From positions 1 through 64,000 of the forward strand of contig NIVC01003175.1 in the NCBI GenBank assembly GCA_002269645.1: a stretch of DNA of 64,000 bases, read 5' to 3'. This DNA is from Macrostomum lignano. Its lineage: Eukaryota. The notes under the pieces were generated by a model. It was not told the origin of the DNA. It saw only the letters and a program-made list of their open reading frames with translations, and searched no databases. Positions 2,448 through 60,636 of this stretch are shown in pieces (position 1 is the first letter of the stretch; each line of letters starts with the position of its first letter). A program made the translations under genes and the position numbers.

Positions 2448-3227
<780 letters not shown>

Positions 3228-12092: not shown

Positions 12093-12134
12093 GCAACAAT
12101 TCGGTTTTTGTGCATCCGCCGCCTCTCCGCTCTG

Positions 12135-12830
12135 CTTCCGCTAATCTGAGTCTGTCTCTCCGCTAATCTGAGTCTGTCTCTCCGCTAATCTGAGTCTGTC
12201 TCTCCGCTAATCTGAGTCTGTCTCACCGCTAATCTGAGTCTGCCTCTCCGCTAATCTGAGTCTGTCTCTCCGCTAATCTGAGTCTGTCTCTCTGCTAATC
12301 TGAGTCTGCCTCTCCGCTAATCTGAGTCTGTCTCTCCGCTAATCTGAGTCTGTCTCTCTGCTAATCTGAGTCTGCCTCTCCGCTAATCTGAGTCTGCCTC
12401 TCCGCTAATCTGAGTCTGTCTCTCCATCCGCTAATCTGAGTCTGTCTCTCCATCCGCTAATCTGAGTCTGTCTCTCTATCCGCTAATCTGAGTCTGTCTC
12501 TCCGCTAATCTGAGTCTGCCTCTCCATCCGCTAATCTGAGTCTGCCTCTCCATCCGCTAATCTGAGTCTGCCTCTCCGCTAATCTGAGTCTGCCTCTCCG
12601 CTAATCTGAGTCTGCCTCTCCATCCGCTAATCTGAGTCTGCCTCTCCATCCGCTAATCTGAGTCTGCCTCTCCATCCGCTAATCTGAGTTTGCCTCTCCA
12701 TCCGCTAATCTGAGTGTGCCTCTCCACTAATCTGAGTCTGCTTCTCCGCTAATTTGAGTCTGCCTCTTCATTTACTAATCTGAGTCTGCCTCTCAGCTAA
12801 TCCGAGTCTGCCTCTCCGCTAATCCGAGTC
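12135..12830. repeat. 22-bp minisatellite (CCGCTAATCTGAGTCTGTCTCT)n between LSG1 and the APMAP-like gene
   Basis: Directly visible; ends about 45 nt upstream of the APMAP-like ATG. Confidence 0.92.
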
Positions 12831-13133
12831 CGCTTTATTTCTAGTTAAGCTGTTGAAAGTTGAAAGTTAAAATCATTGATTTCAACAAATAATTCCAAAA
12901 AATGCAAGGCCGAAAAAACCTCACTCTTTATTATAGCATCATTCATGTAATTTATGTTTGAGTCTCTTATTGTTAGCATGGTTGACAAATGGAAACTACA
13001 CTATCCAATTGCTTTCATATCTTTATGTTAATTTTACCAGAGACCAGAAAACAAGGATCAGCTTATGATTAAGAAAATAATACAAAGACAAAAATACTTG
13101 GACAAGAATCAATTTAACAATCTGCTCAAGCCC

Positions 13134-22779: not shown

Positions 22780-23237
22780 TTCAGAGGCCACTACAGTCTA
22801 AGTAACAGGAACAGTTAACACTGAATTTTTATAAAATAAATAATATATTGGAAGTTACTAACTTTGAGTGCACGAAATTTCGCTACCCACACTCTTTCAA
22901 TGAAATCAGATTTAGTATTATTAATTAATGCATTAAAAATTTATGAAATTTCACGCGATGAAATCTGCAATCTGCATGCTGCTTTATTTTTTTAGATAAG
23001 TGTGCAATATTCAGAAGTTCAAATTCTTACCAAGAAGTTGTGTTCTCATACTAATTAAAATAACCCTTTTCGCTTTTTAATTGAAAGTTTAAAAGTTTTG
23101 AACAAAATTATGTGTTATTTTTATTAAAAAATATCTGGTAATGTACTTTTTGACGAAATTTTGTTATTATGGCTTAAAAATGGGACAACGGAAAAGTCAT
23201 TTAAAAAAAATTCATTTTCAGGATTCTACTTTGTATA

Positions 23238-37460: not shown

Positions 37461-38120
37461 CGGGGTTTCCATAGCTACATGTAGGCCTCACTACATGATA
37501 GAGGATCGTCCAAGCACAACAGTGTTAGCTAGACTGTTAAACAAAGCGAGTAAAACATATTGAATTTCTCAGGAAAAAGGCTGCCTCTTAGAGAGCCCTG
37601 TTTGCCCTTAAAAAGCTTGCTAAGGTCTGTTACAACAAGTGCTCATATAGCAGTTGTGAAGACGCCGCTAGCAACCGCCAGCGTTGTAAAAGAGCATTTA
37701 CTCTCGCCGTCTCTGTTTGCGTAGGCGCCTGTTGACACAATGTTGTTACGCGAGAGCTCTCTTTTAGCTCAACTTTTTCAGAAAATTTCAGAAGAAAATT
37801 TTAAGCGTGCAATGTAGACTGGGGCTTCAGTGCTTAGCTTTCTACTAACAGTGCCTCTAAATATTTTTAGAAGCTTCCAGAAAAAAAGAGAAGATAAGAA
37901 GCACAGTACTAACAAAAGTTATCTACCATGCAGCAGCCGCTTTTGTTTGTCCCTCGTATTGACACAGCACGGAATTGAACGCAGATTGTAACTAAAATGC
38001 TTGCTTAGAAAGCTGTTAAAATAATGATTTAGTTTACTTTGTTTTGTCTTGTACTGTAAGCTTCTTCCATGGATAAATCGATTTTGCAAGCCTCGATACC
38101 ATGCTGTGCTCTGCGGCGAC

Positions 38121-38882
38121 TCAGTCAAACGGCGACACGCACTGGCAGTAGCCTCCGCCTGAGTACACATAGTTGTCAGTGGGCAGGTCAAGCAAGAGTC
38201 CGTTAAGGTAGACCCCAGCTCTATCTTCCACACCTTCATGGTTGTTCGGCTCTCCGCTGCTCCACAGTGCAGCCGAGATGTTGAGACCGCAGCTGGCCCA
38301 CTGCCAGCCTCCTGACGGCTCCGAGCTGCCCGGCAGCTGCCAGCCTCCCACGTAAACTGTGTTGACGGCCGCCACGCCAGCCAGTTGCTCGGCCGCCAGC
38401 TTTCCGACTTTGTCTCGCGCCGCTGCATCACTCAGCTCGGCCATGATGACGAGTCCAGCCTCCGCGTCGCACATCTCCTTGCACCTGGTCCAGTTTCCCG
38501 CACAGCTCATGAACTTGTACTTGGTGCCGCACAGGTCGTCAGCGTAGCCAGCAGGACACAGGGCTCCCATCGGCAGTCCCGGCTGCTGCCTCACAAACAG
38601 CTGTGCTGTGCGATTGCAGCTGCAGTCTCTCACGTTCTTGCTGCACCTGTGAAACACGAACAGCTGGCACGGACCGTCGGACATGCTGAACGCCTGGCAG
38701 TGCGCGACATTGGCGCAGAGCATCGAGCACGTCTTGAGGGTGGTGACCTCCGGGTGAGTTCGCACGAACTCGCTTCTCACGCAGTTGAGAGCCGTGACAG
38801 CATGGAACTGAACTCTGCATTTGCTGCTGCAGATCAGAGGAGTCTGCGACAGAGCGACAATCAGGAAGCTGAGCAGCTTCAT
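38121..38882 (-). CDS. Secreted PAN/apple-like + C-type lectin domain protein, copy A (253 aa, intronless)
   Basis: Hydrophobic N-terminus; C-x3-C-x5-C PAN-like segment; CTLD features (W...C, VYVGG, WQW, WSSGEPNN). Confidence 0.82.
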   Translation of the reverse strand: MKLLSFLIVALSQTPLICSSKCRVQFHAVTALNCVRSEFVRTHPEVTTLKTCSMLCANVAHCQAFSMSDGPCQLFVFHRCSKNVRDCSCNRTAQLFVRQQPGLPMGALCPAGYADDLCGTKYKFMSCAGNWTRCKEMCDAEAGLVIMAELSDAAARDKVGKLAAEQLAGVAAVNTVYVGGWQLPGSSEPSGGWQWASCGLNISAALWSSGEPNNHEGVEDRAGVYLNGLLLDLPTDNYVYSGGGYCQCVSPFD

Positions 38883-40798
38883 CTTGAATTTTCAATTTGT
38901 TAGACTAGAAGAATTTCTTCTCTACAGAGGTTTTCACTGAGACTGTGGGATGCGCGAGGTTCCAGGCATTATTGTAAAGCTTGTCAAGGCAGAGGAGAAA
39001 GCCAATGACGGCACAGCTATGTGCTAACAATATCCGTAGCAAAGGATTGTTGGAGATCTCCCAGGAGTGACGTCACAGTTTGCAGGTTAGTAACCAGCGA
39101 GACAGAGACCCAGCTTCTCAAGTTCCAACTGGCCTTGTCATTGCGGCATGCTGCCGGATTGCAGTTGAAACGGATGCAATCATCATTAAGCCTTCTTGTT
39201 GGCTTCTAATTTCGTGTCATACGAGATCGTACACTGACAAGCGTATGCGACACAAGGACCACTGTAGTCTCAAGGATGAACGATTTGTGCTTTAGCAGCG
39301 AACTGTTAAGGCACGTTGAGACATGAGTGTTCGAGTGAGTTATGAAAATCTTGAGAAAAGTACGTGTTTATCTTGTAGGTTCAAACCAAAAATGCAATTT
39401 TCATTAAGTACTACTGACGAAGTAGTAGGCAGAGTCAAGAGTTGGCGCGTCAGAATACTGATGCATGATTGCATAAACAAAATGGTTTTCTCTATCTTTC
39501 TGACGGCTCCTCTAGCCAGATTGTTTACAAAGATACAAAGAGCCCGACTTTTCCTTGACTATAGCATCGTCAGGCATGCACACACTCGATCTGTGCCTAG
39601 AAGGTTAATTAAAACCTTGACAAGTTTCTAGTTGGGTTGATTTGTAATGACTTATGTGACGGAATCTCAATTTTCTGTTTTGGTTCTTTTGGATTCGAGA
39701 ATACGAGCTAGTTGCCTACCGCCACAATTTTAGAGTCTACTGGGGCCCGTGCTATAGAATCAGGAGTTAGGAGTTATAGGAGTTCTTGCAAGGAGTGCAG
39801 CCCCCTTGCAAGGAGTGTTGCGCAATCGTTTAAGGATGATAGAGAATTGTGTGCTATATCACAATCCTAACTTTACGCTCCTTAAGGATTGAATCTCAGG
39901 AGTGAAAATGCAAATTGCTCAAAAAATATCAATTGTGAGAGCCGTCGCTGCACGCAAAGAGGTATAAATTATACCAGCGTATTTACTCGTTTTATTATAT
40001 GCGTTGACCAAGCAATGCAGAAGAGTATCAAAAGTAAAGGTAAAAAGTCTAAATGTACATGTGTACTTGTAAATATCAATAAAAGAAAATAATACACCAG
40101 TCTAATTATCAAAGAATTGTGTCAAGTGCAATTTAGAGCTCGAGTGTGTTCAAAACGCATTAACTAGTTGATCACGGCGGCCATTGTTGTTGACAACGAT
40201 TTCGTCTTCGTTGTTGGGCTCTAAGATGTCCGGGATCACCTCTGGGTAGAGTTCTGGCTGCTTGTTTTCAAGTTTTCAATAGCACTCTCGGCTGGATCTT
40301 CTTCAAAAAAAATAATTTTTGCCTTAAATTGTCGACGGCGTCTATCATTGACTCCTTCCTCATCAGAATCCGATTCGCTGTCCGAAAACATTATAATCCT
40401 AGCTTGTCTAAGAGTGAAAATTGGCCCTTGAACTCTAGCTTAGGAGTCAAGAGTTAGGAGCGAAATTTTCTCATTCTATAGGACACGCGCTCCTAGAATC
40501 ACTCCTAAAAGCCAACTCCTAGCTCCTAGCTCCTAGACTTCCTCTCCTAATTCTATAGCATGCCACGGACCTTAATGAGTTCTCCTAAATTCACCCAGGA
40601 GTCTCCTAACGTCCTTAAGGAGCCTCCTAGCTCTTAAAATTTACTCTTGATTCTATAGCACAGAAAAGCCAGCTAGGAGCTAGGAGTTAGGACACTCTTA
40701 AGGATTTGACTTGACTTAGCTGCAGGGCTGTCCCGGAGGGGACACAGCGGGAAGGCGCGGGCGCCCATTCCGCTAGTCCCTGAACGGCCGACGCGTCG

Positions 40799-43700
40799 CT
40801 ATGGACGGAGGGTTGGCGCCGCCCAGGGAGGTCCCCCAGTGTCGCCAGCAGCTATGGTGCTCTCTGGAAAGGAGAGTTCAGCCCTGCGGGTGGCCCGAAG
40901 GTAGCGCATGAGCTGATTAAAGTTTTCGGGTTTGCACGCTTCAGTAATAGATGTGTGTGGCCCGAGGTAAGTGAGTCTGGCCCGCGTGAAGGCGGGACAG
41001 ATGCTGACGAAATGCTCAGCGGTTTCGTCACCTGAGTTGCAGAAACTACAGGTGGCGTTGGTGGCGTTGCCCTGCAGGTACTGGTGCCTGGAGAAGCAGC
41101 CGTGACCAGAGAGGGTCATGGTGGCAGCCCGGATGTCTCTGCGCGAGAGGCGCAAGAGGAGCTTCCGGAGCTGGTGAGAGGGCTGAGGGACAGCGCCTCT
41201 GGATTGCCTGCAGTTCGTGCGGTTCGCCCAAGTCGAGCGGTGCTGAGTCCTGATCCACGCTTTGATGCGCGAGTCGATGACACAGCCAGGAATCGGGACA
41301 AGAGGTTCGGGGCCGAGAGAGGAGCCGGAGGCACCAACTTTTGCAAGGGTGTCAGCCAACTCATTTCCTCGGATCCCCACATGCCCCGGAACCCACTTAA
41401 GGGTAATTTTGTTGGCGGAACCCAACACATTGAGGAGTTTGATACAGTCAAGGACTGTAGCAGAGTTGGTGCTGCAGCCACTGATGGCGTGCAAGGCAGC
41501 TTGGCTGTCCGAATGGAAAATGATGTTCTTACCAGTAACGCCAGTGGCGAGAAGCTCTGCAGTGCAGGAGCTGATGGCCAGAACTTCATTTTGGAAAACA
41601 CTGGAGTTGACCCCAGTGTATTGAGCGTGGGTAGCGATGACCCTCCCGTTCAGAAAGATTCCAACACCAAAGCCGGTGTTGGCTGACTGCTTAGAACCGT
41701 CGGTGTAGCAATGAAGCTCACCAGGGTTCCAATGGTCATTGATGTTATCGCGCGAGTCGATAGCTACGGAGTAGCGCTGTCTCAGGTTGAGCGTTGAGGC
41801 AATGCCATCGGTGAAGACGCGATTGGCCTGACACTCGTTGAGAAAGTTGAGGCACAGATCGCTATGCGGGACAAGGTTCCGCTTAGCAGGTGCTCTCATG
41901 TAAATGAATTTGACGCCGGCATCAATTAGACGCCGCGTCGTTCTAGCCGCCTCACCCCTGATGAAGAGGTCAAGAGGCGGAAGATTAAGAAAGGCCCCCA
42001 TGCCAGCAAAGGGCGTGGACCTGGTGGCGTTGCAGATGAGCCTACACGCTCTGCCTTGGATCGTGTTGAGCAGGTCTGCATGGCTTTTGACCTGGGTAGC
42101 GCTAACCCAGACAACAGAGGCGTACGTAATGGCAGGTCTAACTACGGAAGTATAGATCCACCAAAGCCGCTTTGGGATAGACCCCAAGAAGTGCCAAGTG
42201 CTCGTCGGAGCTGGGCCAGGATGGCTGAGGCACGCTTAGCTTTTGCTTTCACGTGGAAGGACCAGTTGAGCCGGTGGTCAAGTGTGACCCCGAGACATCT
42301 GGTCTGGTGCGCGAAGGCAATATCTCTGCCGTAGAGCTGCAGAGGACGTATGTTCCAGCGTAGTCTGCTGGTAAACATAATGGCAACGGTTTTGGGCTCA
42401 GAGAGTTCCAAACCATTGTCATTGGCCCAGGATTCTGCTTTGCGGATAAAGCTCTGCATCAGATCCCTGAGCGTGCTGGGAGACGGTCCTGCCACAATGG
42501 CCGTGACGTCATCAGCATACCCGACTTTGAAGACGGGGTCAGGTCGGGAGTCACTCAGAAGAGCGTCCATGACCAGGTTCCAGAGCGTCGGGGTGAGGAC
42601 TCCGCCTTGGGGTCCACCCTTACAGACTCTGGTGGAGGCAGTTTGCCCAAGAAGTTGGGCAGTGACCGTACGGTTGGAGATCATGTACATGATCCACCGT
42701 ATGAGGGTAGCATGAGCTTTGCGATTTTGAAGGGCCCTCTGAAACGCTTCAAAGATAACGTTGTCGAAGGCGCCAACAATGTCAAGAAAGAGAGCCAGGG
42801 CGTAACCGTCACCCAGTACCGCCCGTTCAATCTTTTCGACAATCGCATGCAGGGCGCTGTCAGTCGACCTCCCGGTACGGAAGGCGTGCTGATTATTGCT
42901 GAGGGGCATCGCTGTCAGCTCGCAGGAGAGCAGCCGCCAGAGAATAAGCCTCTCAGTGAGCTTAAGCATTGCTGACGTTAAGCTAATTGGCCGGAAGGCC
43001 TTGACGCTTTGGTAGTCACCCTTCCCAGGTTTGGGAATAAAGACTACTCGAGCTTCAGTCCAGCTTTTGGGAACGTATCCCAGCTGGATAGAGGCCCGCA
43101 TAAGATTGCGGGTGAGTCTCAGGAACGAGGGTATCTTGGCTGCTTCACGAAGGAGAACAGGGTAGATACCATCAGGTCCAGGAGATTTGAAGGGTTTGAA
43201 GGTTCTGACCGCACGAGCGATTAGGTCTTCAGTGACAATGCCCGCCGCTAGGGTGGCTCCATCCATCGAATGGTTGGGCTCCGGTCTAGCAGTAGGTACC
43301 CTCGGGAAGAATGTGCTAAGCATATGCTGAAGCACTTCTTCAGGGTCTTTAGTAAGAGAGCCATCATCTTTTTTGATCATGGCTAATTTGGACATTTTGT
43401 CCATTGTAAGGGCCTTGACAAGCCTAGAAGTAGGTCTGTCTTGATCCAATTCATTGCAGAATTGGCGCCACTTACATTCCTTGGCCTTGCGCACTTCAGA
43501 TTTGAAATTGCGGGAGGCTTGCCGGAAAAGCTCCATGTCCTCCGGGTTTCCGGTCTTCATGGCACGGCGATGAAGGCTTTTGGCCTTCCGCCTGAGTTTC
43601 CCCAGCTCCGGGTTCCACCACGGCGCCGAGGTCTTGCCTCTGTAGGCGCGAGCAGGACAAGCCGCTTCGTAGGCTGCAATAATGCAACCTGTCAGCGTCT

Positions 43701-44538
43701 CAGCCATATGATCCACATCCTCGCAGGTCTCAATCGGACGTAAGTCCGTGAGTTCCTGCAGGTGCAGATCAAGGGCAGCCTTGTAGGCCGCCCAATCAGT
43801 GTTGCGGATATTGCGTCTCCAAGTGATCGGAGACTGGGTTTTAGTGTCCGCGATATTAAAGGCGATAAAGCAGTGGTCAGACAGGGAGGGCTCCTCAGAC
43901 CAGACTCTCCACTCCTTGACTCTGTCAAAGAGTCTTGGGGTAACGAGTGTGGCGTCGAGGACCTCGGTCCATCTGCCATTATTAAAGGTAGGAGTGCTGC
44001 CGCGGTTGCAGAGCATGAGGTTTGTGTTAGAGATGAGGGCCAGAAGCTCCTCTCCTCTAGTGTTGGTATCTTTGCTGCCCCAGTGCTTGTGGTGCGCGTT
44101 GAGGTCGCCCCCTAAGCACAGCTCAGCGTTCTGGGACTCGCAGTACTGCGCAAGGCGCAGTAAACTCTCGGGAGCAGGGTCTCTGTCGCCTGGGATATAA
44201 ACCGAGGCAACAAGACACGTACGCGGAGAGAAATGATTAGATTGGATGACGCAAAGGTCTCCATCAGAGAGATCAGTCCTCAGCCAAGCCTGGAGATGGC
44301 TAGCAGCGAGGATAGCCGCTCTAGGGCGGCTGTTCCCCGGGCCACACACATAAAAATCAGAGTAGCCAGAGGGAATGTTGGGCAACTTACCGTTGCGCAT
44401 CCAGGGTTCCTGGATCAGGATGAGGCCTGGCCTGTACAGCTCAGCAATCTTCATCAGATTTACTGACGCAGATACGCAATGCTGTAAATTTATTTGCAGA
44501 CAGAATGTCGCTCCTTTGGCAGCGTGGAGCTTAGTCAT
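40799..44538 (-). CDS. LINE ORF2 (endonuclease, reverse transcriptase, RNase H) split by one frameshift near 42180
   Basis: QINLQHC, IQEPW, GGDLNAHHKHWGS, SDHCFI (APE); FRPISL, GGPQGGVLTPTLW, YADD (RT); YTDGSK, SVFQNEVLAI, HSDSQAA, WVPGHVGIRGNELAD (RNase H); C-terminal C-x2-C-x8-H-x4-C. Confidence 0.9.
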
Positions 44539-44577
44539 ACTGTATTAAATGCAATATCTGGCTAGAGCCCAGGGCCA

Positions 44578-46140
44578 TCAAGGAGACTTGGACAACAGAT
44601 CGTCCTCGTCCCAGGCCGCTGGGGCTTGACTGGGAGATGGGAGTTGGTCGACGTCCATGGCCTCCTCACCCCCACCGGCCCCCCCAGCAGAGTCCTCAGG
44701 CTCCGATGACAGGATGGAGGAAGCTTCCTCACCTGCATCTTTACCTTCAGACCCCACCAAGGTGGCCGAGGAGAGCTCGGATTCCGAAGACCCGGCCTCG
44801 TCCTCAACTCCTTCTCCGACTGGCAGGTTTGGTTCCCGGGGCTCGGCCGGAGCCGTTACCGCGGTCGCCGAACTGCTGCTAGCAGAGGGGTAAGATGCAG
44901 CTTTGGCTTTGGGATCGGCTTGCGCCTTTCCTTGGGCCTTAGACTGCGCCCCGCTCTTGCCGGAGATGCCGGGGTTGGCAGTAGCCTTCCCTTTGGCAGA
45001 CTTTCCTCGGCGCAACTTGAGCTTGAGGGCACCCAGCTGGAAAGAGGATCCATTAGGGTACCGACTCGCCCAAGTGCTGGAAAGGCCGAGGACAATTGAG
45101 TTGCCCGTCTCCCCCCTGCGGACTTTACGGTGATACACCAGTCCACTAGCAGGGAGGTCGGGGTTCAGACGCAGTAGGACCCGGCGAATAACGTCTGGTC
45201 CAGCTGCGGTGCTCTTAGCAGGGACGAAAACCACATAGGGTATCGTCTTTGGACGCTGGCCCTCGCGAAGAAAAAGAGCTCCGCCAAGGTCAGCATCCAA
45301 GGAGACCGTCGGTAGCCGCTGGAGCAGCCGCCGAGCGTCCTCCTCGCTGCTAGGAGCAATAAGAACGAATGTGCTTCGCAGCACCATCCGCTCAACGCCG
45401 ATGGAGATTCCCTCCTCGACAGTCAGCTCAATCAGATAGGAGTCAACAGCACTCCACACTTTTTGAAGCTGATCAGTGGTCCAGTCCTGGTCGCGACCTT
45501 GGATGATCACTCCCGGGATTTTGGCCTTGGCCTTCGCCGCAAAGGTAGCTCCCGAAGGAACCTCCTTGTTGGCAGTGGCCATTTGTTGCGCCGTGGTTTC
45601 GGCCTCAGCAGCCGCGGCAGCAGCTCCAGGGAGCGCCGCCGCTGAACTACTGGAGCTTCCACCGGCCGGCCCGCCTGGTTGCCTTGGGACTCCAGTCGCT
45701 TCAGCATCCATGGTGGACGCCGCCGCTTTGGCCCCCGCAGCTCCCTTCTTGGCCTGCCTTTTGGCGCGTTGTTTAGCGCGTTTGCGCTCAAGCCGAGCCC
45801 GCTGAGCTTCATCGGATCTGCCAGATTTGGCCGGTCCTTTAGGCTCAGAGCTCGCGGTTCCCTTAGATCCACCAGCGGAGCTGGCAGGTCTTAGGGTATT
45901 TTGAGTTTGGTAGCTCTGGTCGGATCTGCCAGCAGAGCCAGCCGGTCCTTCCTTTGCCACAGTTGAATCAGTCGGTTGGGATCTGCCAGCAGGGCCGGCC
46001 GGTCCTTCGGACTGAGGTTGGGGTTTAGAAGGGTCCCCATCCCTAGAAATAGCTTGTTTATCCATAGTCGGCTCGAAGGCCATGATAAAAGGTTGGTGGG
46101 CTACCCTCAAAGGGGCGCGGTACCCACCCGGCCGCTCCAC
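44578..46140 (-). CDS. LINE ORF1 (gag-like, DUF4780-like C-terminal region)
   Basis: 520-aa ORF directly upstream of ORF2; segment VVFVP...VLLRLNPDLPASGL...SIVLGL...FQLGALKLKL resembles DUF4780 by eye; probable ATG at 46083. Confidence 0.8.
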   Translation of the reverse strand: MERPGGYRAPLRVAHQPFIMAFEPTMDKQAISRDGDPSKPQPQSEGPAGPAGRSQPTDSTVAKEGPAGSAGRSDQSYQTQNTLRPASSAGGSKGTASSEPKGPAKSGRSDEAQRARLERKRAKQRAKRQAKKGAAGAKAAASTMDAEATGVPRQPGGPAGGSSSSSAAALPGAAAAAAEAETTAQQMATANKEVPSGATFAAKAKAKIPGVIIQGRDQDWTTDQLQKVWSAVDSYLIELTVEEGISIGVERMVLRSTFVLIAPSSEEDARRLLQRLPTVSLDADLGGALFLREGQRPKTIPYVVFVPAKSTAAGPDVIRRVLLRLNPDLPASGLVYHRKVRRGETGNSIVLGLSSTWASRYPNGSSFQLGALKLKLRRGKSAKGKATANPGISGKSGAQSKAQGKAQADPKAKAASYPSASSSSATAVTAPAEPREPNLPVGEGVEDEAGSSESELSSATLVGSEGKDAGEEASSILSSEPEDSAGGAGGGEEAMDVDQLPSPSQAPAAWDEDDLLSKSP

Positions 46141-49707: not shown

Positions 49708-50571
49708 TTTAGAAATAATAAAGTCCATAGAAATGAAATTAGGGGTAGGGTTAAGCAGCAAAGAACTTCCAATCACACAGTATATTTGGTTGACTGATTA
49801 TCAACTTCGAGCCGTATTACCCAAGAGCAAGCTGCAGGAGTAACAATGATCAGAGAAAAGAAAAACTAATAAAAAGATTTTGTACTTGCATTAGCAACAG
49901 AAAAACCGTTGTATCAAAAAGTAACATAGCATTTGTCCTCTTTCATTTACCTTCAGTAGCTTACGGTAAACACAGGGACAATATCCCCGTCGTCTGGCGC
50001 GGCGCTCTGGTGTACCAGCGGCCCAGGCTCGATTCCAAGTGCAGCCACATTAATTTGGAGCTAAATTGGAATCTCGGCTTGGCTCTGCTCGTGCAATTAA
50101 CGGCTTTGAGGCCCAACCCCAAGGCACAGGGAAGTGTACATAACTAGCGATAAAATAAAGTTAGGGCCGCTGTACACTCCTGTGTGAGTGTGTGCCTGCG
50201 TACGTATCCGCGCGCTTGTATGCCTGCTCAGGGGAGTCGGCGGAATGGGCAGCAATGCCTCTCGCCGGTTGTGTGACAATGTCGCTTAAAGTGCGCCAGG
50301 GTGCACATGCTGCAGCCCCCCGCCTCTAACTAAAAAACTAACTCCGGTAAACGCAAAAAAGCACTGATTTCAAGTTTGCAAAACAGACAGAATGAGACAG
50401 GAAAAATCAGACAGAGCAAGCAGTTTCCGAGTTTCACAAATGGAGCATCAAAACGTAAACGGGAAAAAACATAAAAGGTTGCAAAGTCGTTACAGACATC
50501 TGTGTTCTTGGTTCGCTTTCCGGAGCAGCACAAGGGCGCATGGAGACCTTGCTCAGCTCCAGGGCAGCAGC

Positions 50572-51333
50572 TCAGTCAAACGGCGACACGCACTGGCAGT
50601 AGCCTCCACCTGAGTACACATAGTTGTCAGTGGGCAGGTCAAGCAAGAGTCCGTTAAGGTAGACCCCAGCTCTATCTTCCACACCTTCATGGTTGTTCGG
50701 CTCTCCGCTGCTCCACAGTGCAGCCGAGATGTTGAGACCGCAGCTGGCCCACTGCCAGCCTTCTGACGGCTCCGAGCTGCCCGGCAGCTGCCAGCCTCCC
50801 ACGTAAACTGTGTTGACGGCCGCCACGCCAGCCAGTTGCTCGGCCGCCAGCTTTCCGACTTTGTCTCGCGCCGCTGCATCACTCAGCTCGGCCATGATGA
50901 CGAGTCCAGCCTCCGCGTCGCACATCTCCTTGCACCTGGTCCAGTTTCCCGCACAGCTCATGAACTTGTACTTGGTGCCGCACAGGTCGTCAGCGTAGCC
51001 AGCAGGACACAGGGCTCCCATCGGCAGTCCCGGCTGCTGCCTCACAAACAGCTGTGCTGTGCGATTGCAGCTGCAGTCTCTCACGTTCTTGCTGCACCTG
51101 TGAAACACGAACAGCTGGCACGGACCGTCGGACATGCTGAACGCCTGGCAGTGCGCGACATTGGCGCAGAGCATCGAGCACGTCTTGAGGGTGGTGACCT
51201 CCGGGTGAGTTCGCACGAACTCGCTTTTCACACAGTTGAGAGCCGTGACAGCATGGAACTGAACTCTGCATTTGCTGCTGCAGATCAGAGGAGTCTGCGA
51301 CAGAGCGACAATCAGGAAGCTGAGCAGCTTCAT
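50572..51333 (-). CDS. Secreted PAN/apple-like + C-type lectin domain protein, copy B (253 aa, intronless)
   Basis: Differs from copy A at 4 nucleotides I could find, giving R/K and G/E changes. Confidence 0.82.
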   Translation of the reverse strand: MKLLSFLIVALSQTPLICSSKCRVQFHAVTALNCVKSEFVRTHPEVTTLKTCSMLCANVAHCQAFSMSDGPCQLFVFHRCSKNVRDCSCNRTAQLFVRQQPGLPMGALCPAGYADDLCGTKYKFMSCAGNWTRCKEMCDAEAGLVIMAELSDAAARDKVGKLAAEQLAGVAAVNTVYVGGWQLPGSSEPSEGWQWASCGLNISAALWSSGEPNNHEGVEDRAGVYLNGLLLDLPTDNYVYSGGGYCQCVSPFD

Positions 51334-52288
51334 CCTATTCGTGAAATAACTTAGAATCTTGACTACAGGTTTTTTGTAGCGTTTGTGAAAGTTTCACCAG
51401 ATATTGTAGCTGCCTAGACAATATCGACCAATCATGACGCTGGTGCACTATGCAGCCTCAGGATGCGGCTAATTTGTTGGGCATGGTTTCAAACAATTAA
51501 GGAGGATATATAATTTTAATGAAGATGAGAAAATTTTCATAGCCGAGGCAACAGTGGCTACTGTGCAGGAAAAGTAGAGTGGAGTGTATTTTATGAAAAA
51601 AAGCGTTCAGACTGCGTTCAAGGGATATTTAAACATTGATTGATTTATAGTTTTAAACTCCCTACCTTTCTTCCCCCACCCTCTCCAGCGTGCAGGATTT
51701 ATTTTGCCTATGGTTGAACGTCATGGTCTATGATTAAAATAGAATCAGTCTAAGACTTATGAACATTCAAAAATCGTTACATTACTTGCAGTGAGTCCAT
51801 TTAATTATTTTGCTGTGCGACGTACTTTGTAATGTAAATTTGAAAGATGGATTTACATTCTCTGTCTTCACATTGAAGTACATAGCAAAAGTTTTGCTTT
51901 TTTAGTTTGTTGTCATTACCAATAAATAACGCTGCAGATTTCGTTCTTTTAACACGAGACAAGTTGCTGCTATTAGTAACTGACCCTCAAGTCACTGATG
52001 GTGGTTCGACCCACTTAGCTCCTGACCAGCTTGACCCACTCAGCCTAATCAAACAAAATTAAACCTTTTAAAAGGAATATTTGAATCACTTTTGGACAAT
52101 TTCTGGAACAAAAGCGAAAACGATGTTCAACTTCAAGCTACGTGAAAATTTATGTGCCTTCTTTCTCCTTTATTTCTAGCCACTGTGACGAATATTGCTG
52201 TTCATAGGAATAAATAAATACTAACACAGACTGGGATGTTGCTACTGTTTGAAACAAACCTATTTTATCCTTCACTGTCCAAAGTCTC

Positions 52289-55200
52289 TCATTGAATGAG
52301 CTTCTTCTTGAGCTCCAGAGCGGAGAAGAACATGCCGACAGCGCCGCTCAGAGCGCCGAACAAGATGATGCAGACGCGAACAAAAACGCCGAATGCGTTG
52401 AGCTGCTTCCGTTTGAGCACCAGGTGAAACCACGCCGGAAAGATGAAGCAGAGGCAGGTGCCAGTGAAGGAGCCGACCAGGCCCATCAGGAGGGCAAAGT
52501 GGGGTACCAGCATCGACAGGAATAGGCCAGCGGTCATGATGAGGGACCGGGTGAGCAGGATCCACAGCCAGTGCAAGCTGCCGTTGCGGTGGAAGGTCGG
52601 GTGGAAGGCGCCAAGGAAGGTCGCATCGAATCGCTCGATAACCACGAAGATGACGAGCGGCATGCTGGAGCGGTTCGGGCGCGGGGTGTGCTGCTGGTTT
52701 ATTTGTTGAGGACGATAGAAACGCTGGAGACAATGAGTATGAGCTAGCAATCAGTGGCTGCTCAACTTTTACATCTTCAATAAGCGGTTTCCTGTCGGGA
52801 CTCTAATCAGCTATAACAGTGCCCCTTCAAGACACACTGATCAGCTATAACAATGCCCCTTCAAGACACACTGATCAGCTATAACAATGCCATTCAAGAC
52901 ACACTGATCAGCTATAACAATGCCCCTTCAAGACACATTAATGAGCTATAACAATGCCATTCAAGACACACTGAACAGCTATAACAATGCCCCTTCAAGA
53001 CACACTCATCAGCTATAACAATGCCCCTTCAAGACACACTGATCAGCTATAACAATGCCCCTTCAAGACACACTGAACAGCTATAACAATGCCCTTCAAC
53101 ACACACTGATCAGCTACAACAATGCCCCTTCAAGACACACTGATCAGCTATAACAATGCCCCTTCAAGACACACTGATCAGCTATAACAATGCCATTCAA
53201 GACACACTGATCAGCTATAACAATGCCCCTTCGAGACACACTGATCAGCTATAACAATGCCCCTTCAAGACACTGATCAGCTATAACAATGCCCCTTCAA
53301 CACACACTGATCAGCTATAACAATGCCCCTTCAAGACACACTCATCAGCTATAACAATGCCCCTTCAAGACACACTGATCAGCTATAACAATGCCCCTTC
53401 AAGACACACTGATCAGCTATAACAATGCCATTCAAGACACACTGATCAGCTATAACAATGCCCCTTCAAGACACATTAATGAGCTATAACAATGCCATTC
53501 AAGACACACTGATCAGCTATAACAATGCCCCTTCAAGACACACTGATCAGCTATAACAATGCCCCTTCAAGACACACTGATCAGCTATAACAATGCCCCT
53601 TCAAGACACACTGATCAGCTATAACAATGCCCCTTCAAGACACACTGAACAGCTATAACAATGCCCCTTCAAGACACACTGATCAGCTATAACAATGCCA
53701 TTCAAGACACACTGATCAGTTATAACAATGCCCCTATCAAGACACACTGATCAGCTATAACAATGCTCCTTCAACACACACTGATCAGCTATAACAATGC
53801 CCCTTCAACACACACTGATCTGCTATAACAATGCCCCTTCAAGACACACTCATCAGCTATAACAATGCCATTCAAGACACACTGATCAGTTATAACAATG
53901 CCCCTATCAAGACACACTGATCAGCTATAACAATGCTCCTTCAACACACACTGATCAGCTATAACAATGCCCCTTCAAGACACACTGATCAGCTATAACA
54001 ATGCCATTCAAGACACACTGATCAGCTATAACAATGCCCCTTCAAGACACACTGATCAGCTATAACAATGCCTTCTGATCCACAGTTTAATCCATAGCAA
54101 TTCTCCTCGAGACAACTGGGACTCAACCAATCGACAGTCAAAGGACGCTGGGTGCATATTCAATTACCAAAGGTATATATAGAGCTCATGACTAACCTGA
54201 AGAATACGTTGACAAAGATGAGCGAATTCGAGATGAAGCTAAAATCGGCGTCAACCTCCAGATTGCGGCCGAACTCCTGCTCAGTGGCCATGCCGAATAT
54301 GAGCACAGCCATGACGCCCATGACGGTCTTGACAATGGCGGCCACCCCGAACGACACGGTGAGCATGGCCGGGTAGCTGTTTGGCCGGCGCATGCACTCC
54401 TCGATGCCGGGGAACACGGCGTGGGCGCAGTAGGAGAACACGATGATGCCGAAGCTAACGGGGAAGCTGGTTGGATCGAAGCCGGGCATGTTGGTCAGCG
54501 CCAGCTGGTCGAAGTGCATGAAGCAGAAGACCAGCACGGACACGATGCTAGACATCAGGCTGGCCACCGCCAGCATGCTGAACCAGGAGATGAAGGACAT
54601 TCGCGTGATGAACGTGAGCGGCAGGGTGGCGTAGGTGCTGATGCAGCTCCAGTGATAGATGTTCAGCGATGGCACTCGCTCCTTCATCAGCGAGGAGCTG
54701 GTGCTGGCCAGCAGGATGATGTACAGGCACATCCCGCCGAACATCTCCACCACGGAGACGATTGTGACGGCGCGCCGGCCGAACCGGGGCCAGACCATGG
54801 CGCCGACATCCGGGTAGGATTTCAGGTAGCGGACTCGGCGCCCGGTGCGCGGACAACCGGTGTAGAGACAGTCGACTAGCAGACAGCCGGTGTAGCAGCA
54901 CAGGGCGGCGACCAGACAGATGACCCCGATGGAGGCCCAGCTGCCGCGGCTGACCGCGTAGGGCACGCCCATGATGCCGATGCCCTGCACCAGATTGGTC
55001 ACGTTGAATCCGGCCGCGAAGGCCGAGTTGTTCCGGTCCTCGCACGGCACCTCGTGGATTGACTGCTGAGTGTAGCTGCGAATCTTGTGCACGCTGGACA
55101 TGAACCGGTTGGACATTGTCCTCGTGCGCGGCCGAAGTCCGCTGCCGACTGACGATTGCGCCCGTTGGTGCCTGGACCCGGTGACGCCGCTGGCGCTGAA

Positions 55201-55398
55201 CTGCTCGCTAGAGACCTCCATCAGCTCCTCATCCTCGCGCACCGTGGTCAGGTAGGGACCAGTGCCCGCGCGGCCTCGGCCGCCGGAGCTGCTGGCGCCG
55301 GGGTCATTGATAACAAAAGAGCTCTCGTCCGTCTGCGTGTAGCTGACGCAGGTGCTCGGACCCACGATTGGCACCTTCTCGTCGCCGTGGTCGGACAT
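52289..55398 (-). CDS. Vesicular inhibitory amino acid transporter-like protein (SLC32/Aa_trans family; 2 exons)
   Basis: Exons 55398-54197 and 52674-52289 (phase 2, VFFS|MPL). Motifs AGFNVTNLVQGIGIMGVPYA, CYTGCLLVDCLY, FPVSFGIIVFSY, VPHFALLMGLVGSFTGTCLCFIFP parallel VGAT/UNC-47. Confidence 0.85.
52810..54075. repeat. 34-bp minisatellite (CTATAACAATGCCCCTTCAAGACACACTGATCAG)n in the VGAT-like intron
   Basis: Directly visible. Confidence 0.94.
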
Positions 55399-56383: not shown

Positions 56384-56649
56384 CTGGTTGCCATGTACAA
56401 AATATGCAATGAACGAGCAAGCGTACATCTGCACAATCAACTTCTCCTAACTGTTTATTAGTTACACTACCGTAGATTGAGCACGTTGGCTCTCGGTTAG
56501 AGTTTATTCAGGTGCCCTGCTAAGGTTAGCGACTTACTATATGCCGTATAGAGTAGACTCATCTTGTACAGTACAGTACTCGGAGCCAGTGCGATTGAGT
56601 CTGTTGTTGTTCTGTCTGCCTGTCTGTCTATCTTATCTATCCACCTATC

Positions 56650-57551
<902 letters not shown>

Positions 57552-57648
57552 CTACTAGATAGATGTATCTAGTAGTAGAGACAGTAGTAGTCCTACTCCT
57601 ACTACTCTAGTAGTAGAGTAGTAGGAGTCTATCTATCTACGAATAAAT

Positions 57649-57689
57649 AAACCCTGACGAAGGCCCAGTCCAGGCCGAAACATCGGTTT
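57649..57689 (+). ncRNA. Minimal type I hammerhead ribozyme motif, copy 1
   Basis: Stem I AAACC/GGTTT, core CTGACGA, stem II GGCC-CAGTCCA-GGCC, GAAA, minimal stem III ACAT, predicted cleavage after C57684. Confidence 0.7.
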
Positions 57690-58494
57690 CTGAATATTCG
57701 ACAACTAACGTTCTTCAATATTTCCGTGTGTGTGGTTTGCAGTTTGAAGCTGCCTTTTGCATATCTATTACCCAGGATTGGATTATTGAGGCTCGCCATG
57801 TTTGTCAACAAAAAGTCTATGTATATTTTCCGCTAAAAATCTACTCGGGATAAGCAAGAGTACTATTTCTGCAGCTGCAAATATTAAATGTACGACTACT
57901 ACTACTCTACTACTACTACTTCTACTACTACTACAACAACAACTACTACTACTACTACTGCAACTACTATAGTGCTACTACTACTGACAATCTAGCTTCA
58001 ACTGATCGGCAGTGCCCAGTCGCCTGTGACCAGGGGCTGTGCAGGCGGCGATCTGTGACCAGACGCCGCCAACTGCGTCTCGCGTGGCCTGTCTGGCTAC
58101 CCAATTAATTACTGTATATGAATTCAATAGTTACATCTAATTATTTACACTTATTTATGCAAAGTTCTCAGTGCTCTGTATTAATTTAATATTTGTTTTT
58201 TTTTCTACGGGCGTAATTAACTTATTTGTTGAACTTTTCAAGATGCTTAGTCATACACTTCTACGCTTTAAATCTGGTTTTCTATAGCACCTAACATCTT
58301 TATTTTTGTGCAAGGCTTTAGCTGCAAGACTTTAACCAATCAGCGTGCTTCAACTCACGTTTTTAACTAATTATACGTACACATCTTTACTCAACACTGC
58401 TCAGTGCACCCCCAAAAGTCGCATATATATATTGAAATTATGTTAAAATAACTTCACAGCCAATTTATTTGTTTTTAAACCCGAATAAATAAAT

Positions 58495-58535
58495 AAACCC
58501 TGACGAAGGCCCAGTCCAGGCCGAAACATCGGTTT
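58495..58535 (+). ncRNA. Minimal type I hammerhead ribozyme motif, copy 2
   Basis: Identical to copy 1; predicted cleavage after C58530. Confidence 0.7.
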
Positions 58536-58607
58536 CTGAATATTCGACAACTAACGTTCTTCAATATTTCCGTGTGTGTGGTTTGCAGTTTGAAGCTGCC
58601 TTTTGCA

Positions 58608-58702
<95 letters not shown>

Positions 58703-59020
58703 AGGAGTTGTAGCCTATGGTGGTTAGAGCGTCGGACTCACGACTGAAACGTCGGGATTCGATTCCCGATCCCATTGGAACAATTTGTGTCCTTGAGCAA
58801 GACACTTAACTCCGCATTGCTTCAGTTCACCCAGCTGTAAAATGGGTGCCAGCATTAGCTGGGGTAATTGAGGTTGTGTGTGGCGACCCCCCCCCCCCCA
58901 GTCCTTGGACTGAACAGCCGTACGCAGCCTTCAGATACGCCGTGCAATAGCTGCGGCTGAGCTGTCGGTTGCTCATCTGGCCATCAGGGCAGCTGCAGTA
59001 AATAATAATATGATTATTGA
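58703..59020 (+). mobile_element. tRNA-derived CORE-type SINE, copy 3
   Basis: Same head, CORE and tail as the 48712 copy; abuts the ATCT tract. Confidence 0.85.
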
Positions 59021-59205: not shown

Positions 59206-60636
59206 TCAAGGCTTGAGCAGCGGAATGCCCAGCTCAGCCCGCAGCTTGTTTGCCTCTCTGATCTCTTCCTCCTCGCGGTCGCGGTTCCGCTGTTGCCGAT
59301 CCCGATCCCGGTCCCGTCGATCGCCTGAGTCCCGCCTCGGCCTCTTCCGTTCGCCGCGGTCTTTATCCTTGTCTTTGTCCTTGTCTCGCCTGTCTTTATC
59401 CTTATTATGGTGCCGGTCTTTGTCCTTGGCCGATGATTTGCCGTCCTTGCCGCCGCCGCTGCTGTCTTTTTTGTCCTTCTTGCGCTTCTTCTTCGAATCA
59501 CCGCCGCCGCCGTTGTCGACAGTTTTGCGGCGTCGTTCGGCTGGCGACCTTGACCTCGATTTGGACTTTGACCTTGACCTGGACCTGCAATGTACACGCA
59601 TGCATGCATAAATATAATTTGACTACTAGTATAATTTCAAGGCGCAGAGTTTACATGTATACGGCTTTCAATTAGAAAGTCAGGGCTGCTGTACACCCCG
59701 TGTGAGCGTGTTCGTGCTCAGAGGTCAGCGATATTGGCATGACTGCTGGCTGCGGGTTGCCTGCCCACTTTGATTAGCGCCACTGCTTAAAGCCCCTTAA
59801 TAACAAGCGCATTAAGGCCCACACAGGTAACAAGTAGATAGAATTGCGCACCTTGATCGGGACCGTCGCCTCTGTCGATGGTGCTGCTGACTGTGACGAT
59901 GGTGCTGTTGCCTGTGCGGCGGCGGCGATGGCCGCTTTGGCGGCGGCGAGACGTTGTCGCGGCGTCGCGGACTTGGCGAAGCTGACGACCTTCTATCGCT
60001 GCCGTCTCGACTGGCGTCCTCTCCGTCGTCATCCTCATCGGCGGCCAAGGCATCCTCCAGGCGGACATCCTGAAGCTCCTCGTCGAGCAGCGAGACCCTG
60101 GGATCAAGTTCGTTTTCCTCTTCTAGCACCTGTCGCTTCTGCAGCCGCGGCAAGATGACATCGCAGGAGCGCTCCTCGCGCAACAGTTCGTCAACGAATT
60201 CGTCCATATGGATGATGGAGAAGGCGCCCTGCCGGTCGATGCGCTTGAGCTTGCGATAGTCATTATAAAGCGGCTCCAAGTAGCGATAGCACTCAAGCGA
60301 ATCTTGAGTCAGCCGCAGGTAGAACATGCCGAGAGCGCGAGCATATTTATGATCTTTCTGGCGAATGAACTCGATAATGATGTCCTTGGCTGGCTGGATC
60401 TGCAGCATCTTCAATGTCAGGCAGAGAAACGGAGTCGGTTTAATGTTGCCGCCGTGTACTCCGCCGATGTACTTGAGAGCGACGGCCCGTTCAACAAGCA
60501 GCTCCTCGTTGACGGCGAAGCACTCCTCCTTCCAGTATCGGCACTCGTAGATTCGGGAGCGAATGATTTTTTCTATCAAATACTGCGGATTGGTGCCGTG
60601 CACCGTGTGCGCGTCCTTCACAGTGCGATTGGCCAT
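59206..60636 (-). CDS. PRPF38A: Pre-mRNA splicing factor 38A (2 exons)
   Basis: MANRTVKDAHTVHGTNPQYLIEKIIRSRIYE; KPTPFLCLTLKMLQIQP; exons 60636-59852 and 59584-59206 (phase 2); RS-rich tail ending EEEEIREANKLRAELGIPLLKP. Confidence 0.95.

What the first reader, a model, noticed from the sequence alone, without database searches (positions are those of the whole stretch)
57641..58612. Tandem minimal hammerhead ribozymes defining an 846-nt retrozyme-like unit
Seen: two identical direct repeats, each with a type I hammerhead layout (stem I AAACC/GGTTT, CTGACGA, GGCC hairpin, GAAA-CAT-C). Predicted cleavage sites 57684 and 58530 are 846 nt apart, and no RT ORF lies between them. Established: Penelope-like elements carry minimal hammerheads with a palindromic stem III (often ACGU) that cleave as dimers, and retrozymes are non-autonomous hammerhead elements that give monomeric or circular RNA. 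Here stem III reads ACAT, and one extra A follows A9. Inference: a non-autonomous PLE-mobilised element able to release an 846-nt, possibly circular, RNA if the variant still cleaves.
Basis: partly seen in the sequence, partly recalled or inferred. Interest (0 to 1): 0.74.

Follow-up and report, generated by a model that had tools for sequence, protein, structure and literature searches.

The report
Ribozyme-bearing non-coding retroelement in flatworm microsatellite
A 975-bp non-coding mobile element of the flatworm Macrostomum lignano carries a minimal hammerhead ribozyme motif in each of its two terminal repeats and sits inside a (TCTA)n microsatellite; it is a new example of the known Penelope-type "retrozyme-like" elements, and this copy's ribozyme looks weakened.

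Summary
Window 57642-57768 and 58488-58614 are 127-nt, 100% identical direct repeats 846 nt apart. Each holds a type I minimal hammerhead with a complete catalytic core; C17 is at 57684 and 58530. Nothing between them codes for a protein.

The window is Macrostomum lignano contig NIVC01003175.1. A second, non-homologous locus of the same genome (L002) holds at least 4.4 head-to-tail units of the same family, 87% identical, with a 1.6-kb unit. It is also embedded in (TCTA)n, in the same orientation, and has a different 5' truncation.

Terminal partial-tandem repeats, multicopy arrays, microsatellite insertion and a hammerhead with the extra base after A9 are the published anatomy of Penelope-like elements and their non-autonomous derivatives.

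Three things are not supported or not shown:
- **Ribozyme state.** The window's hammerhead differs from the L002 version at three positions. All three break pairs (helix III AUAU to ACAU, and two pairs of helix II) and none is compensated.
- **RNA release.** No transcript source covering both ribozymes is evident, and the 846-nt RNA is not unusually structured.
- **Partner.** No Penelope RT/GIY-YIG partner could be looked for with these tools.

Verdict: new member of a known kind, moderate interest.

The parts
56623..57551 (+). Upstream (TCTA)232 microsatellite: the inferred insertion target
   Evidence: TRF, 99% matches. The second locus, L002, has the same repeat on the same strand, upstream of its array.
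57548..57628 (.). Two perfect hairpin palindromes (14-bp and 15-bp stems) built from TCTA/CTA units, between the microsatellite and the element. Possibly a foldback scar of integration; unexplained.
   Evidence: DNA fold -26.7 kcal/mol, z = -4.72, 0 of 200 shuffles as good.
57640..57768 (+). Upstream terminal repeat (pLTR-like): a 5'-truncated partial copy consisting of the last 129 nt of the unit
   Evidence: 100% identical to 58488-58614 over 127 nt. The left boundary is fixed by alignment to the internal copy and to the L002 units.
57649..57689 (+). Minimal type I hammerhead, copy 1.
- Helix I: 57649-57653 with 57685-57689; distal helix 57640-57645 with 57695-57700
- Core: CUGACGA 57654-57660; bulged A 57661
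- Helix II hairpin: 57662-57676
- GAAA: 57677-57680
- C15.2, A16.2, U16.1: 57681-57683
- C17: 57684; predicted cleavage between 57684 and 57685
57769..58481 (+). Non-coding body of the unit.
- (CTA)n-rich stretch: 57891-57985
- Single copy of the roughly 255-bp sub-repeat, which is 3.7x in L002: 57896-58100
- Blocks 100% conserved against L002: 58025-58064 and 58339-58418 (CCAAT...TATATA, promoter-like by eye)
   Evidence: blastn and alignment to L002; TRF; no ORF or domain.
58482..58614 (+). Downstream terminal repeat, the 3' end of the full unit. The 3' junction lies within ATATCTAT, which overlaps the microsatellite register by about 7 nt.
58495..58535 (+). Minimal type I hammerhead, copy 2. 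C17 at 58530; predicted cleavage between 58530 and 58531.
58608..58702 (+). Downstream (TATC)24, the same (TCTA)n microsatellite continuing after the insertion
   Evidence: TRF, 100% matches

Best explanation
Window 57640-58614 is a young, 1.15-unit insertion of a non-coding retroelement family of Macrostomum lignano. Its architecture is that of a non-autonomous Penelope-like element, also called a 'retrozyme-like' element.

**Inferred life cycle**
1. A more-than-unit-length or circularised RNA of the element is reverse-transcribed at a nick in a (TCTA)n microsatellite.
2. Priming uses the microhomology between the bottom-strand (TAGA)n and the RNA's UAUCUAU, which lies 84 nt downstream of the ribozyme site.
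3. Synthesis runs more than once round or along the unit. This gives a full unit preceded by a 5'-truncated partial copy, which are the two terminal repeats. At the second locus it gave an array of at least four units.
4. Each unit carries one minimal type I hammerhead without its own helix III. It can only become active by pairing with a second copy, and it would cut multimeric transcripts into unit-length RNAs with ends that can be ligated.

**Shown**
- The repeats, the motif and the absence of coding capacity.
- The second independent locus with a tandem array.
- The shared microsatellite and orientation, and the variable 5' ends.
- The match to published PLE hammerhead hallmarks.

**Inferred**
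- The RT partner (PLE RT with GIY-YIG endonuclease).
- Template circularity.
- Ribozyme activity.

For this particular copy I infer that it is probably inert as an RNA source. Its ribozyme has lost the helix III palindrome and two helix II pairs. Only its 3' ribozyme is preceded by the element's conserved upstream block. The strand concerned is antisense to both neighbouring genes.
For: - **Repeats and motif.**
- **Organism.** Aa_trans ORF 54160-55398(-) is 100% identical to BOX15_Mlig006742g1 on NIVC01003175.1, and window coordinates equal record coordinates.
- **Family.** A chimeric six-frame translation of the element hit one M. lignano protein, P0091. Its locus L002 holds units 87-88% identical to the window's.
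- **Array.** Hammerhead cores lie at L002 16299, 17918, 19535 and 21150, with a period of 1615-1619.
- **Unit length.** The difference is explained by the 255-bp sub-repeat, present 3.7x in L002.
- **Microsatellite flanks.** The array is flanked by (ATCT/CTAT)n at 11810-15597 and 22784-23140.
- **Independence.** The flanks of the two loci are not homologous.
- **5' ends.** They differ: the window's is at helix I, L002's is inside the sub-repeat.
- **Literature on PLEs.**
  - PLE min-hammerheads sit in the pLTRs, carry a base between 9 and 10.1, have a G10.1-C11.1 pair and act as dimers (PMC4209133).
  - PLEs and their non-autonomous derivatives form pLTRs and head-to-tail multicopy insertions and prefer microsatellites (PMC8557442).
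  - Animal retrozymes are argued to be non-autonomous PLE derivatives with consensus lengths of 51-972 bp (bioRxiv 10.64898/2026.07.22.740005).
- **Transcription.** In L002 an annotated exon (15612-16082) is element sequence spliced to a host exon. The hammerhead strand is therefore transcribed there.
Against: - No PLE RT or GIY-YIG was seen in the roughly 90 kb available. I could not establish that M. lignano has PLEs at all.
- Only two loci of the family were reachable.
- There is no covariation in the helices: 0 of 17 pairs change on both sides, and 3 pairs vary only by breaking.
- The hammerhead is not better conserved than the rest of the unit. It has 3 changes in 41 nt against 13% overall, while other blocks are 100% conserved over 40-80 nt.
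- Rfam hammerhead models give no hit.
- The 846-nt RNA is not more structured than shuffles.
- The 3' end of the L002 array lies in an assembly gap, so a constant 3' terminus is unproven.
Confidence: 0.62

Rival explanations
1. The element is mobilised by another reverse transcriptase, for example a microsatellite-specific LINE of the R1 type. The tandem units would arise by template jumping, and the hammerhead would be an inherited passenger.
For: - From my own knowledge, orientation-specific insertion into microsatellites is also typical of some R1-clade LINEs.
- An intact-looking LINE (APE-RT-RNase H) lies in the same window at 40799-46140.
- No PLE protein was found.
Against: - That LINE has no (TCTA)n tail and no tandem repeat at its 3' end.
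- It shares no sequence with the element.
- A hammerhead in the terminal repeats, partial-tandem repeats and head-to-tail arrays are together the PLE/retrozyme signature.
Confidence: 0.13
2. The element is not currently a retroelement. It is a satellite or segmental tandem repeat that grew by unequal crossing-over or slippage inside unstable (TCTA)n tracts. The hammerhead would be a decaying relic of an old PLE terminal repeat.
For: - The genome is extremely rich in tandem repeats.
- The unit itself contains a 255-bp sub-repeat that expanded from 1x to 3.7x.
- The ribozyme shows only disruptive changes and no excess conservation.
- The 2026 preprint proposes local amplification of PLE-derived repeats by unequal crossover.
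Against: - The two loci have unrelated flanks, so the sequence must have moved at least once.
- Both copies sit in the same microsatellite in the same orientation.
- The window's terminal repeats are 100% identical, which points to a recent event.
Confidence: 0.15
3. The hammerhead-like motif is a chance match inside an ordinary direct repeat and has no ribozyme ancestry.
For: - There is no Rfam hit.
- There is no covariation.
- Helix III is not palindromic in the window's copy.
Against: - The descriptor gave 0 hits in 300 simulated windows.
- The full core, the bulged base, the G10.1-C11.1 pair and helix I are retained in a lineage 13% diverged. There helix II has 6 bp and helix III is the palindrome AUAU.
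- The motif lies exactly in the terminal repeat, as in PLEs.
Confidence: 0.05

Closest known systems
Minimal hammerheads in the pseudo-LTRs of Penelope-like elements (Cervera & de la Pena 2014), for example Cercyon PLEs of Schistosoma mansoni
   Same: - Type I topology with a complete core.
- An unpaired base between A9 and 10.1, and a G10.1-C11.1 pair.
- A short helix I of 5 bp.
- No helix III hairpin, only four bases between GAA and C17.
- A position in both flanking direct repeats.
- A flatworm host.
- In the L002 lineage, a long helix II (6 bp) and a palindromic helix III (AUAU).
   Different: - There is no RT/GIY-YIG ORF between the repeats.
- In the window's copy helix III is ACAU, which is not palindromic, and helix II has only 4 bp.
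Non-autonomous PLE derivatives: MRC1 and related Chlamys-type elements of Chlamydomonas (Craig et al. 2021), and animal 'non-LTR retrozymes' as PLE derivatives (Li, Clavereau & Pollet, bioRxiv 2026)
   Same: - Non-coding.
- pLTR formed by partial tandem copies, and multicopy head-to-tail insertions.
- Microsatellite insertion bias.
- The 846-bp unit length is within the reported range of 51-972 bp.
   Different: - The target here is the tetranucleotide (TCTA)n, not (TA)n, (CA)n or (C)n.
- Sequence similarity to an autonomous partner's 3' end was not testable.
- The L002 unit of 1.6 kb is longer than the reported retrozyme consensuses.
Metazoan non-LTR retrozymes (Cervera & de la Pena 2020)
   Same: - Tandem repeats, each with one type I hammerhead.
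- Low GC (38% here).
- No LTR, PBS or PPT.
- Proposed circular-RNA intermediate.
   Different: - Those carry canonical hammerheads with loop-loop contacts.
- Their units are 170-400 nt.
- Their RNAs are highly self-paired. Here the hammerhead is minimal, the unit is 846-1617 nt and the fold z-score is -0.52.
Plant LTR retrozymes (Cervera, Urbina & de la Pena 2016)
   Same: - A non-autonomous element of similar size.
- One hammerhead in each terminal repeat.
   Different: - Plant retrozymes have type III hammerheads.
- They have true LTRs with PBS and PPT, and 4-bp target-site duplications.
- They are mobilised by Gypsy elements. None of these features is present here.

Membership tests
PLE-type minimal hammerhead ribozyme | Conserved core: C3 U4 G5 A6 N7 G8 A9, G12 A13 A14, A15.1/U16.1, and H17 not G | tested here: met
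   CUGACGA...GAAA-C-A-U-C in both copies.
PLE-type minimal hammerhead ribozyme | Unpaired base between A9 and 10.1, and a G10.1-C11.1 closing pair | tested here: met
   A at 57661 and 58507. The GGCC...GGCC helix starts G-C. The criterion is taken from PMC4209133.
PLE-type minimal hammerhead ribozyme | Palindromic positions 15.2-16.2, so that two copies can form helix III | tested here: not met
   The window reads ACAU, which gives tandem C·A mismatches in a dimer. The related L002 units read AUAU, which is palindromic.
PLE-type minimal hammerhead ribozyme | Location in the flanking direct repeats of the element | tested here: met
   Both motifs lie inside the 127-nt repeats.
PLE-type minimal hammerhead ribozyme | Compensatory changes in helices across family members | tested here: inconclusive
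   0 of 17 pairs change on both sides, 14 never vary and 3 vary only by breaking. Only two lineages were available.
PLE-type minimal hammerhead ribozyme | Self-cleavage at C17 as a dimer | not testable with these tools
   This needs in vitro transcription. MFE dimer predictions were uninformative.
Autonomous Penelope-like element | ORF encoding RT plus GIY-YIG endonuclease between the pLTRs | tested here: not met
   No ORF longer than 84 codons, no Pfam domain and no RT or GIY-YIG motif.
Non-autonomous PLE derivative | Partial-tandem (pLTR) structure and multicopy head-to-tail insertions with variable 5' truncation | tested here: met
   The window holds 1.15 units. L002 holds at least 4.4 units. 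Their 5' ends fall at different positions in the unit.
Non-autonomous PLE derivative | Insertion bias for microsatellites | tested here: met
   Both independent loci lie in (TCTA)n in the same orientation. The sample is only two loci.
Non-autonomous PLE derivative | Sequence similarity of its 3' end or pLTR to an autonomous PLE in the same genome | not testable with these tools
   No DNA search of the M. lignano genome is on hand. Two metagenome scans for the motif found nothing.
Metazoan non-LTR retrozyme | Canonical type I hammerhead with its own helix III and loop 1-loop 2 contacts | tested here: not met
   There is no helix III hairpin. The Rfam Hammerhead models give no hit at E<=10.
Metazoan non-LTR retrozyme | Short tandem units (about 170-400 nt, up to 972 bp in the 2026 survey) of low GC | tested here: inconclusive
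   The unit is 846 nt here with GC 38%. In L002 it is 1617 nt with GC 44.5%.
Metazoan non-LTR retrozyme | Abundant, highly self-paired circular RNA | tested here: inconclusive
   The predicted fold of the 846-nt monomer is no better than shuffles, z = -0.52. Expression and circularity are not testable here.
Plant LTR retrozyme | Type III hammerhead, PBS, PPT and a 4-bp target-site duplication | tested here: not met
   The topology is type I. There is no PBS-like or polypurine sequence next to the repeats. A target-site duplication cannot be read in a microsatellite.

The most novel reading that the evidence does not exclude
A hammerhead-bearing, non-autonomous Penelope-type family is strictly specific for a tetranucleotide microsatellite, (TCTA)n, in one orientation. 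Reverse transcription would be primed by annealing of the nicked microsatellite to an internal UAUCUAU of a circular or multimeric RNA. This would be mechanistically close to the way endonuclease-less PLEs and telomerase use short repeats.

The window's copy transposed after its ribozyme had lost helix III pairing and two helix II pairs. That would be natural evidence that hammerhead cleavage is dispensable for PLE-type mobilisation.
Probability: 0.2. Interest if true: 0.55.

Novelty: new member of a known kind. Interest (0 to 1): 0.36.

Why it matters
- It adds a free-living flatworm laboratory model, which has transgenesis and RNAi, to the organisms with hammerhead-bearing non-coding retroelements.
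- It provides a naturally matched pair of ribozyme variants. The L002 type has helix III AUAU and a 6-bp helix II. The window type has ACAU and a 4-bp helix II.
- That pair could be used to ask whether hammerhead cleavage is needed for mobilisation and for circular RNA formation. The PLE literature leaves this question open (Craig et al. 2021 note that HHR-less PLEs proliferate well).
- The (TCTA)n target would extend the list of microsatellites used by PLE-type elements.
- The concepts themselves are already published: min-hammerheads in pLTRs, non-autonomous PLE derivatives and microsatellite bias.

Tried and rejected
- **Rfam.** Searches at gathering and E<=10 thresholds on the window and on L002 gave no hammerhead family. 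I judged this a limit of the models for helix-III-less motifs.
- **Other copies in the window.** blastn of the element against the window found none.
- **Metagenome scans.** Two scans for the family's hammerhead sequence gave 0 hits.
- **PLE proteins.** Regex scans of six-frame translations of the window, L001 and L002 for PLE RT and GIY-YIG motifs found none.
- **More M. lignano DNA.** I looked up the window's LINE ORF2 and the 253-aa repeat ORF by exact protein. Neither is on record.
- **Empty-site test.** Paralogues of the host gene next to the L002 array exist only as UniProt entries without contigs, so no empty site could be shown.
- **Dimer prediction.** RNAcofold-type prediction of the double hammerhead was dominated by domain-swapped hairpins and says nothing about helix III.
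- **Supplements.** The supplementary PLE consensus files of Craig et al. 2021 are not held.
- **Inverted-copy reading of 57548-57628.** I rejected reading the palindromic segment as an inverted 5'-truncated copy of the element, because it lacks the reverse complement of the element's 3' end. Only low-complexity CTA/TAG similarity is present.
- **Paralogy of the two loci.** I rejected this because their flanks are not homologous.
- **From-memory PLE query.** I did not use a from-memory PLE protein as a database query. The word-based search would return the closest relatives of that query rather than M. lignano's.

Full report
**1. What is in the sequence**

Window 57642-57768 and 58488-58614 are a 127-nt direct repeat, 100% identical, with a start-to-start spacing of 846. 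The repeat continues 2 nt to the left (CG). Just there the copies differ by one AATA unit: (AATA)2 upstream and (AATA)3 downstream.

Each repeat contains AAACC-CUGACGA-A-GGCC(CAGUCCA)GGCC-GAAA-CAU-C-GGUUU. This 31-nt core string occurs only at 57654-57684 and 58500-58530. A descriptor I wrote for minimal type I hammerheads finds exactly these two sites in the window on either strand. It finds none in 300 Markov-simulated windows. By my analytic estimate the chance expectation is about 4e-4 per window.

The MFE fold shows an open core flanked by three helices:
- helix I, AAACC/GGUUU;
- a distal extension, CGAAUA/UAUUCG;
- helix II, GGCC/GGCC.

The 975-bp element has no reading frame longer than 84 codons, and that one is low-complexity. 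It has no Pfam domain and no RT or GIY-YIG motif.

Rfam reports no hammerhead even at E<=10. It also misses the better-formed relative described below. I therefore read this as a blind spot for hammerheads that lack a helix III hairpin.

**2. Where the window comes from, and the surroundings**

The ORF at 54160-55398(-) is 100% identical to Macrostomum lignano BOX15_Mlig006742g1 on contig NIVC01003175.1. Window coordinates equal record coordinates.

The element lies between two genes, both on the minus strand: a PRP38-like gene (59206-60636) and the amino-acid transporter gene (52289-55398). The hammerhead strand is antisense to both.

The element is embedded in one microsatellite, with (TCTA)232 at 56623-57551 and (TATC)24 at 58608-58702. 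Its 3' junction falls inside ATATCTAT, which shares about 7 nt with the microsatellite register.

Between the long array and the element lies an 81-nt segment that folds into two perfect hairpins, z = -4.7. I could not explain this segment.

**3. A second locus of the same family**

No tool here searches the flatworm genome by DNA. I therefore queried the protein database with a chimera of all stop-free translations of the element.

The single hit, P0091 (BOX15_Mlig029014g1), led to locus L002 on contig NIVC01002743.1. Its features are:
- **Array.** L002 15600-22253 is a head-to-tail array of at least 4.4 units, 87-88% identical to the window's unit.
- **Period.** One hammerhead sits in each unit, at 16299, 17918, 19535 and 21150, giving a period of 1615-1619.
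- **Unit length.** The unit is longer only because a 255-bp internal sub-repeat is present 3.7 times instead of once.
- **5' end.** The array starts with a copy truncated inside the sub-repeat.
- **3' end.** The array runs into an assembly gap.
- **Flanks.** It is flanked on both sides by the same microsatellite on the same strand, (ATCT)n at 11810-15597 and (CTAT)n at 22784-23140.

The non-repeat flanks of the two loci are unrelated. These are therefore independent insertions, not paralogous copies of one event.

TCTA arrays cover about 1.6% of the window. Two out of two insertions in that repeat, in one orientation, is thus unlikely to be chance, although n = 2.

In L002 the annotated last exon of the host gene (15612-16082) is element sequence spliced to an exon ending at 11802. 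Other gene models of the same gene family continue differently. So the hammerhead strand is transcribed there, driven by the host gene.

**4. The ribozyme compared between the two lineages**

L002 reads AAACC-CUGACGA-A-GGCCCA(GUC)UGGGCC-GAAA-UAU-C-GGUUU. Helix II has 6 bp and helix III is AUAU, which is self-complementary.

This matches the published PLE minimal hammerhead point by point (PMC4209133):
- a helix II larger than usual;
- a helix I of 4-5 bp;
- an unpaired base at the 5' end of stem II;
- a G10.1-C11.1 pair;
- palindromic positions 15.2/16.2;
- action as a dimer;
- low activity in vitro.

The window's version differs at three positions. UG has become CA in the 3' strand of helix II, and U15.2 has become C. 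All three changes break pairs.

A formal count gives 14 of 17 helix pairs invariant, 3 that vary only by breaking, and 0 with compensatory change. The ribozyme, with 3 differences in 41 nt, is not better conserved than the unit as a whole at 87%. Other blocks are identical over 40-80 nt: 58025-58064, and 58339-58418 with CCAAT and TATATA motifs.

The two window repeats are identical to each other, so the weakened ribozyme was already in the template that was copied. Two readings follow. Either cleavage is not needed for mobilisation, which Craig et al. 2021 already raise because HHR-less PLEs proliferate well, or the variant still works in vivo.

**5. Mechanism**

The insert is 1.15 units long, and its ends are not at the ribozyme cleavage sites. 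It was therefore not copied from a cleaved linear monomer. The template was either an uncleaved RNA longer than one unit or a circular one.

A fixed start at a microhomology with the target, a variable 5' end, partial-tandem terminal repeats and multi-unit arrays are what is described for PLEs and their non-autonomous derivatives (PMC8557442). They are also what the circular-RNA model of Cervera & de la Pena proposes.

I therefore favour mobilisation by a PLE RT with GIY-YIG endonuclease at nicked (TCTA)n (confidence 0.62). The enzyme partner, the circularity of the template and the catalysis are all inferred.

The rivals, with their confidences, are:
- another RT, such as a microsatellite-specific LINE (0.13);
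- a relic amplified only by unequal crossing-over (0.15);
- a chance motif (0.05).

For the window's copy, release of an 846-nt RNA is doubtful for four reasons:
- the ribozyme is weakened;
- the upstream repeat is truncated immediately 5' of helix I, so only the 3' ribozyme is preceded by the element's conserved block;
- upstream lies about 1 kb of microsatellite, and the neighbouring genes are on the other strand;
- the monomer's predicted fold is ordinary, z = -0.52.

**6. Comparison with what is known, and novelty**

The element works like, and in my view is, a non-autonomous PLE-type element. It fails the test for an autonomous PLE because it has no ORF.

It fails two tests for classical metazoan non-LTR retrozymes: it lacks a canonical hammerhead, and it lacks a short, strongly self-paired unit. 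It fails all tests for plant LTR retrozymes.

A 2026 preprint argues that animal retrozymes are PLE derivatives, with consensus lengths up to 972 bp. The category is therefore established.

What is new is the host (I found no paper linking M. lignano with hammerheads or PLEs), the tetranucleotide target, and the natural pair of strong and weak ribozyme variants.

**Verdict**

The element is a new member of a known kind, with interest about 0.36.

Noticed in passing
window 57548-57628: Two adjacent perfect hairpin palindromes (14-bp and 15-bp stems) made of TCTA/CTA-type units lie between the pure (TCTA)232 array and the 12-nt TCTA run that abuts the element's 5' end. DNA fold z = -4.7. They may be a foldback scar of integration, or microsatellite instability.
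   Followed up: partly
window 58704-58899: A SINE-like sequence lies directly after the downstream microsatellite. It has a tRNA-like head (A-box-like and B-box-like motifs), a GTCCTTGAGCAAGACACTTAAC core and a poly-C end. ARAGORN and Rfam do not call it.
   Followed up: partly
window 40799-46140 (-): A LINE with long open frames: APE+RT of 798 aa, an RNase H ORF of 462 aa and an upstream 520-aa ORF. No microsatellite tail. Exact products are not on record in the gene collection.
   Followed up: partly
window 38120-38883 and 50571-51334: A 764-bp direct repeat, 99.5% identical and 12,451 bp apart, brackets the LINE region. Each copy carries a 253-aa ORF on the minus strand. Its nature is unknown.
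   Followed up: no
window 5975-7357 (-): An ORF with a PIF1-like helicase domain (Helitron-like). Its N-terminal half is encoded by a 28-bp minisatellite at 6639-7490.
   Followed up: no
L002 10001-16085: The annotated gene BOX15_Mlig029014g1 splices from an exon ending at 11802, across a 3.8-kb (ATCT)n tract, into the first element copy (15612-16082). Its last 157 residues are therefore translated transposon sequence. Related gene models continue with other exons.
   Followed up: yes
window 58339-58438 and 58025-58064: These blocks are 98-100% identical between the two element lineages, which are otherwise 13% diverged. The first contains CCAAT (58338) and TATATATA (58424-58433) about 60 nt upstream of the 3' hammerhead, so it may be an internal promoter or an RT recognition region. 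This was judged by eye only.
   Followed up: no
window 57642, 58484, 58492: AATAAA hexamers form the 5' strand of hammerhead helix I. A polyadenylation signal would therefore direct cleavage inside the ribozyme. This could be chance in AT-rich sequence.
   Followed up: no
window, whole: About 25 separate micro- and minisatellite arrays occur in 64 kb. They include (TGTC)197 at 2447-3227 and a 34-bp x 37 array at 52806-54072. L002 is similar.
   Followed up: no
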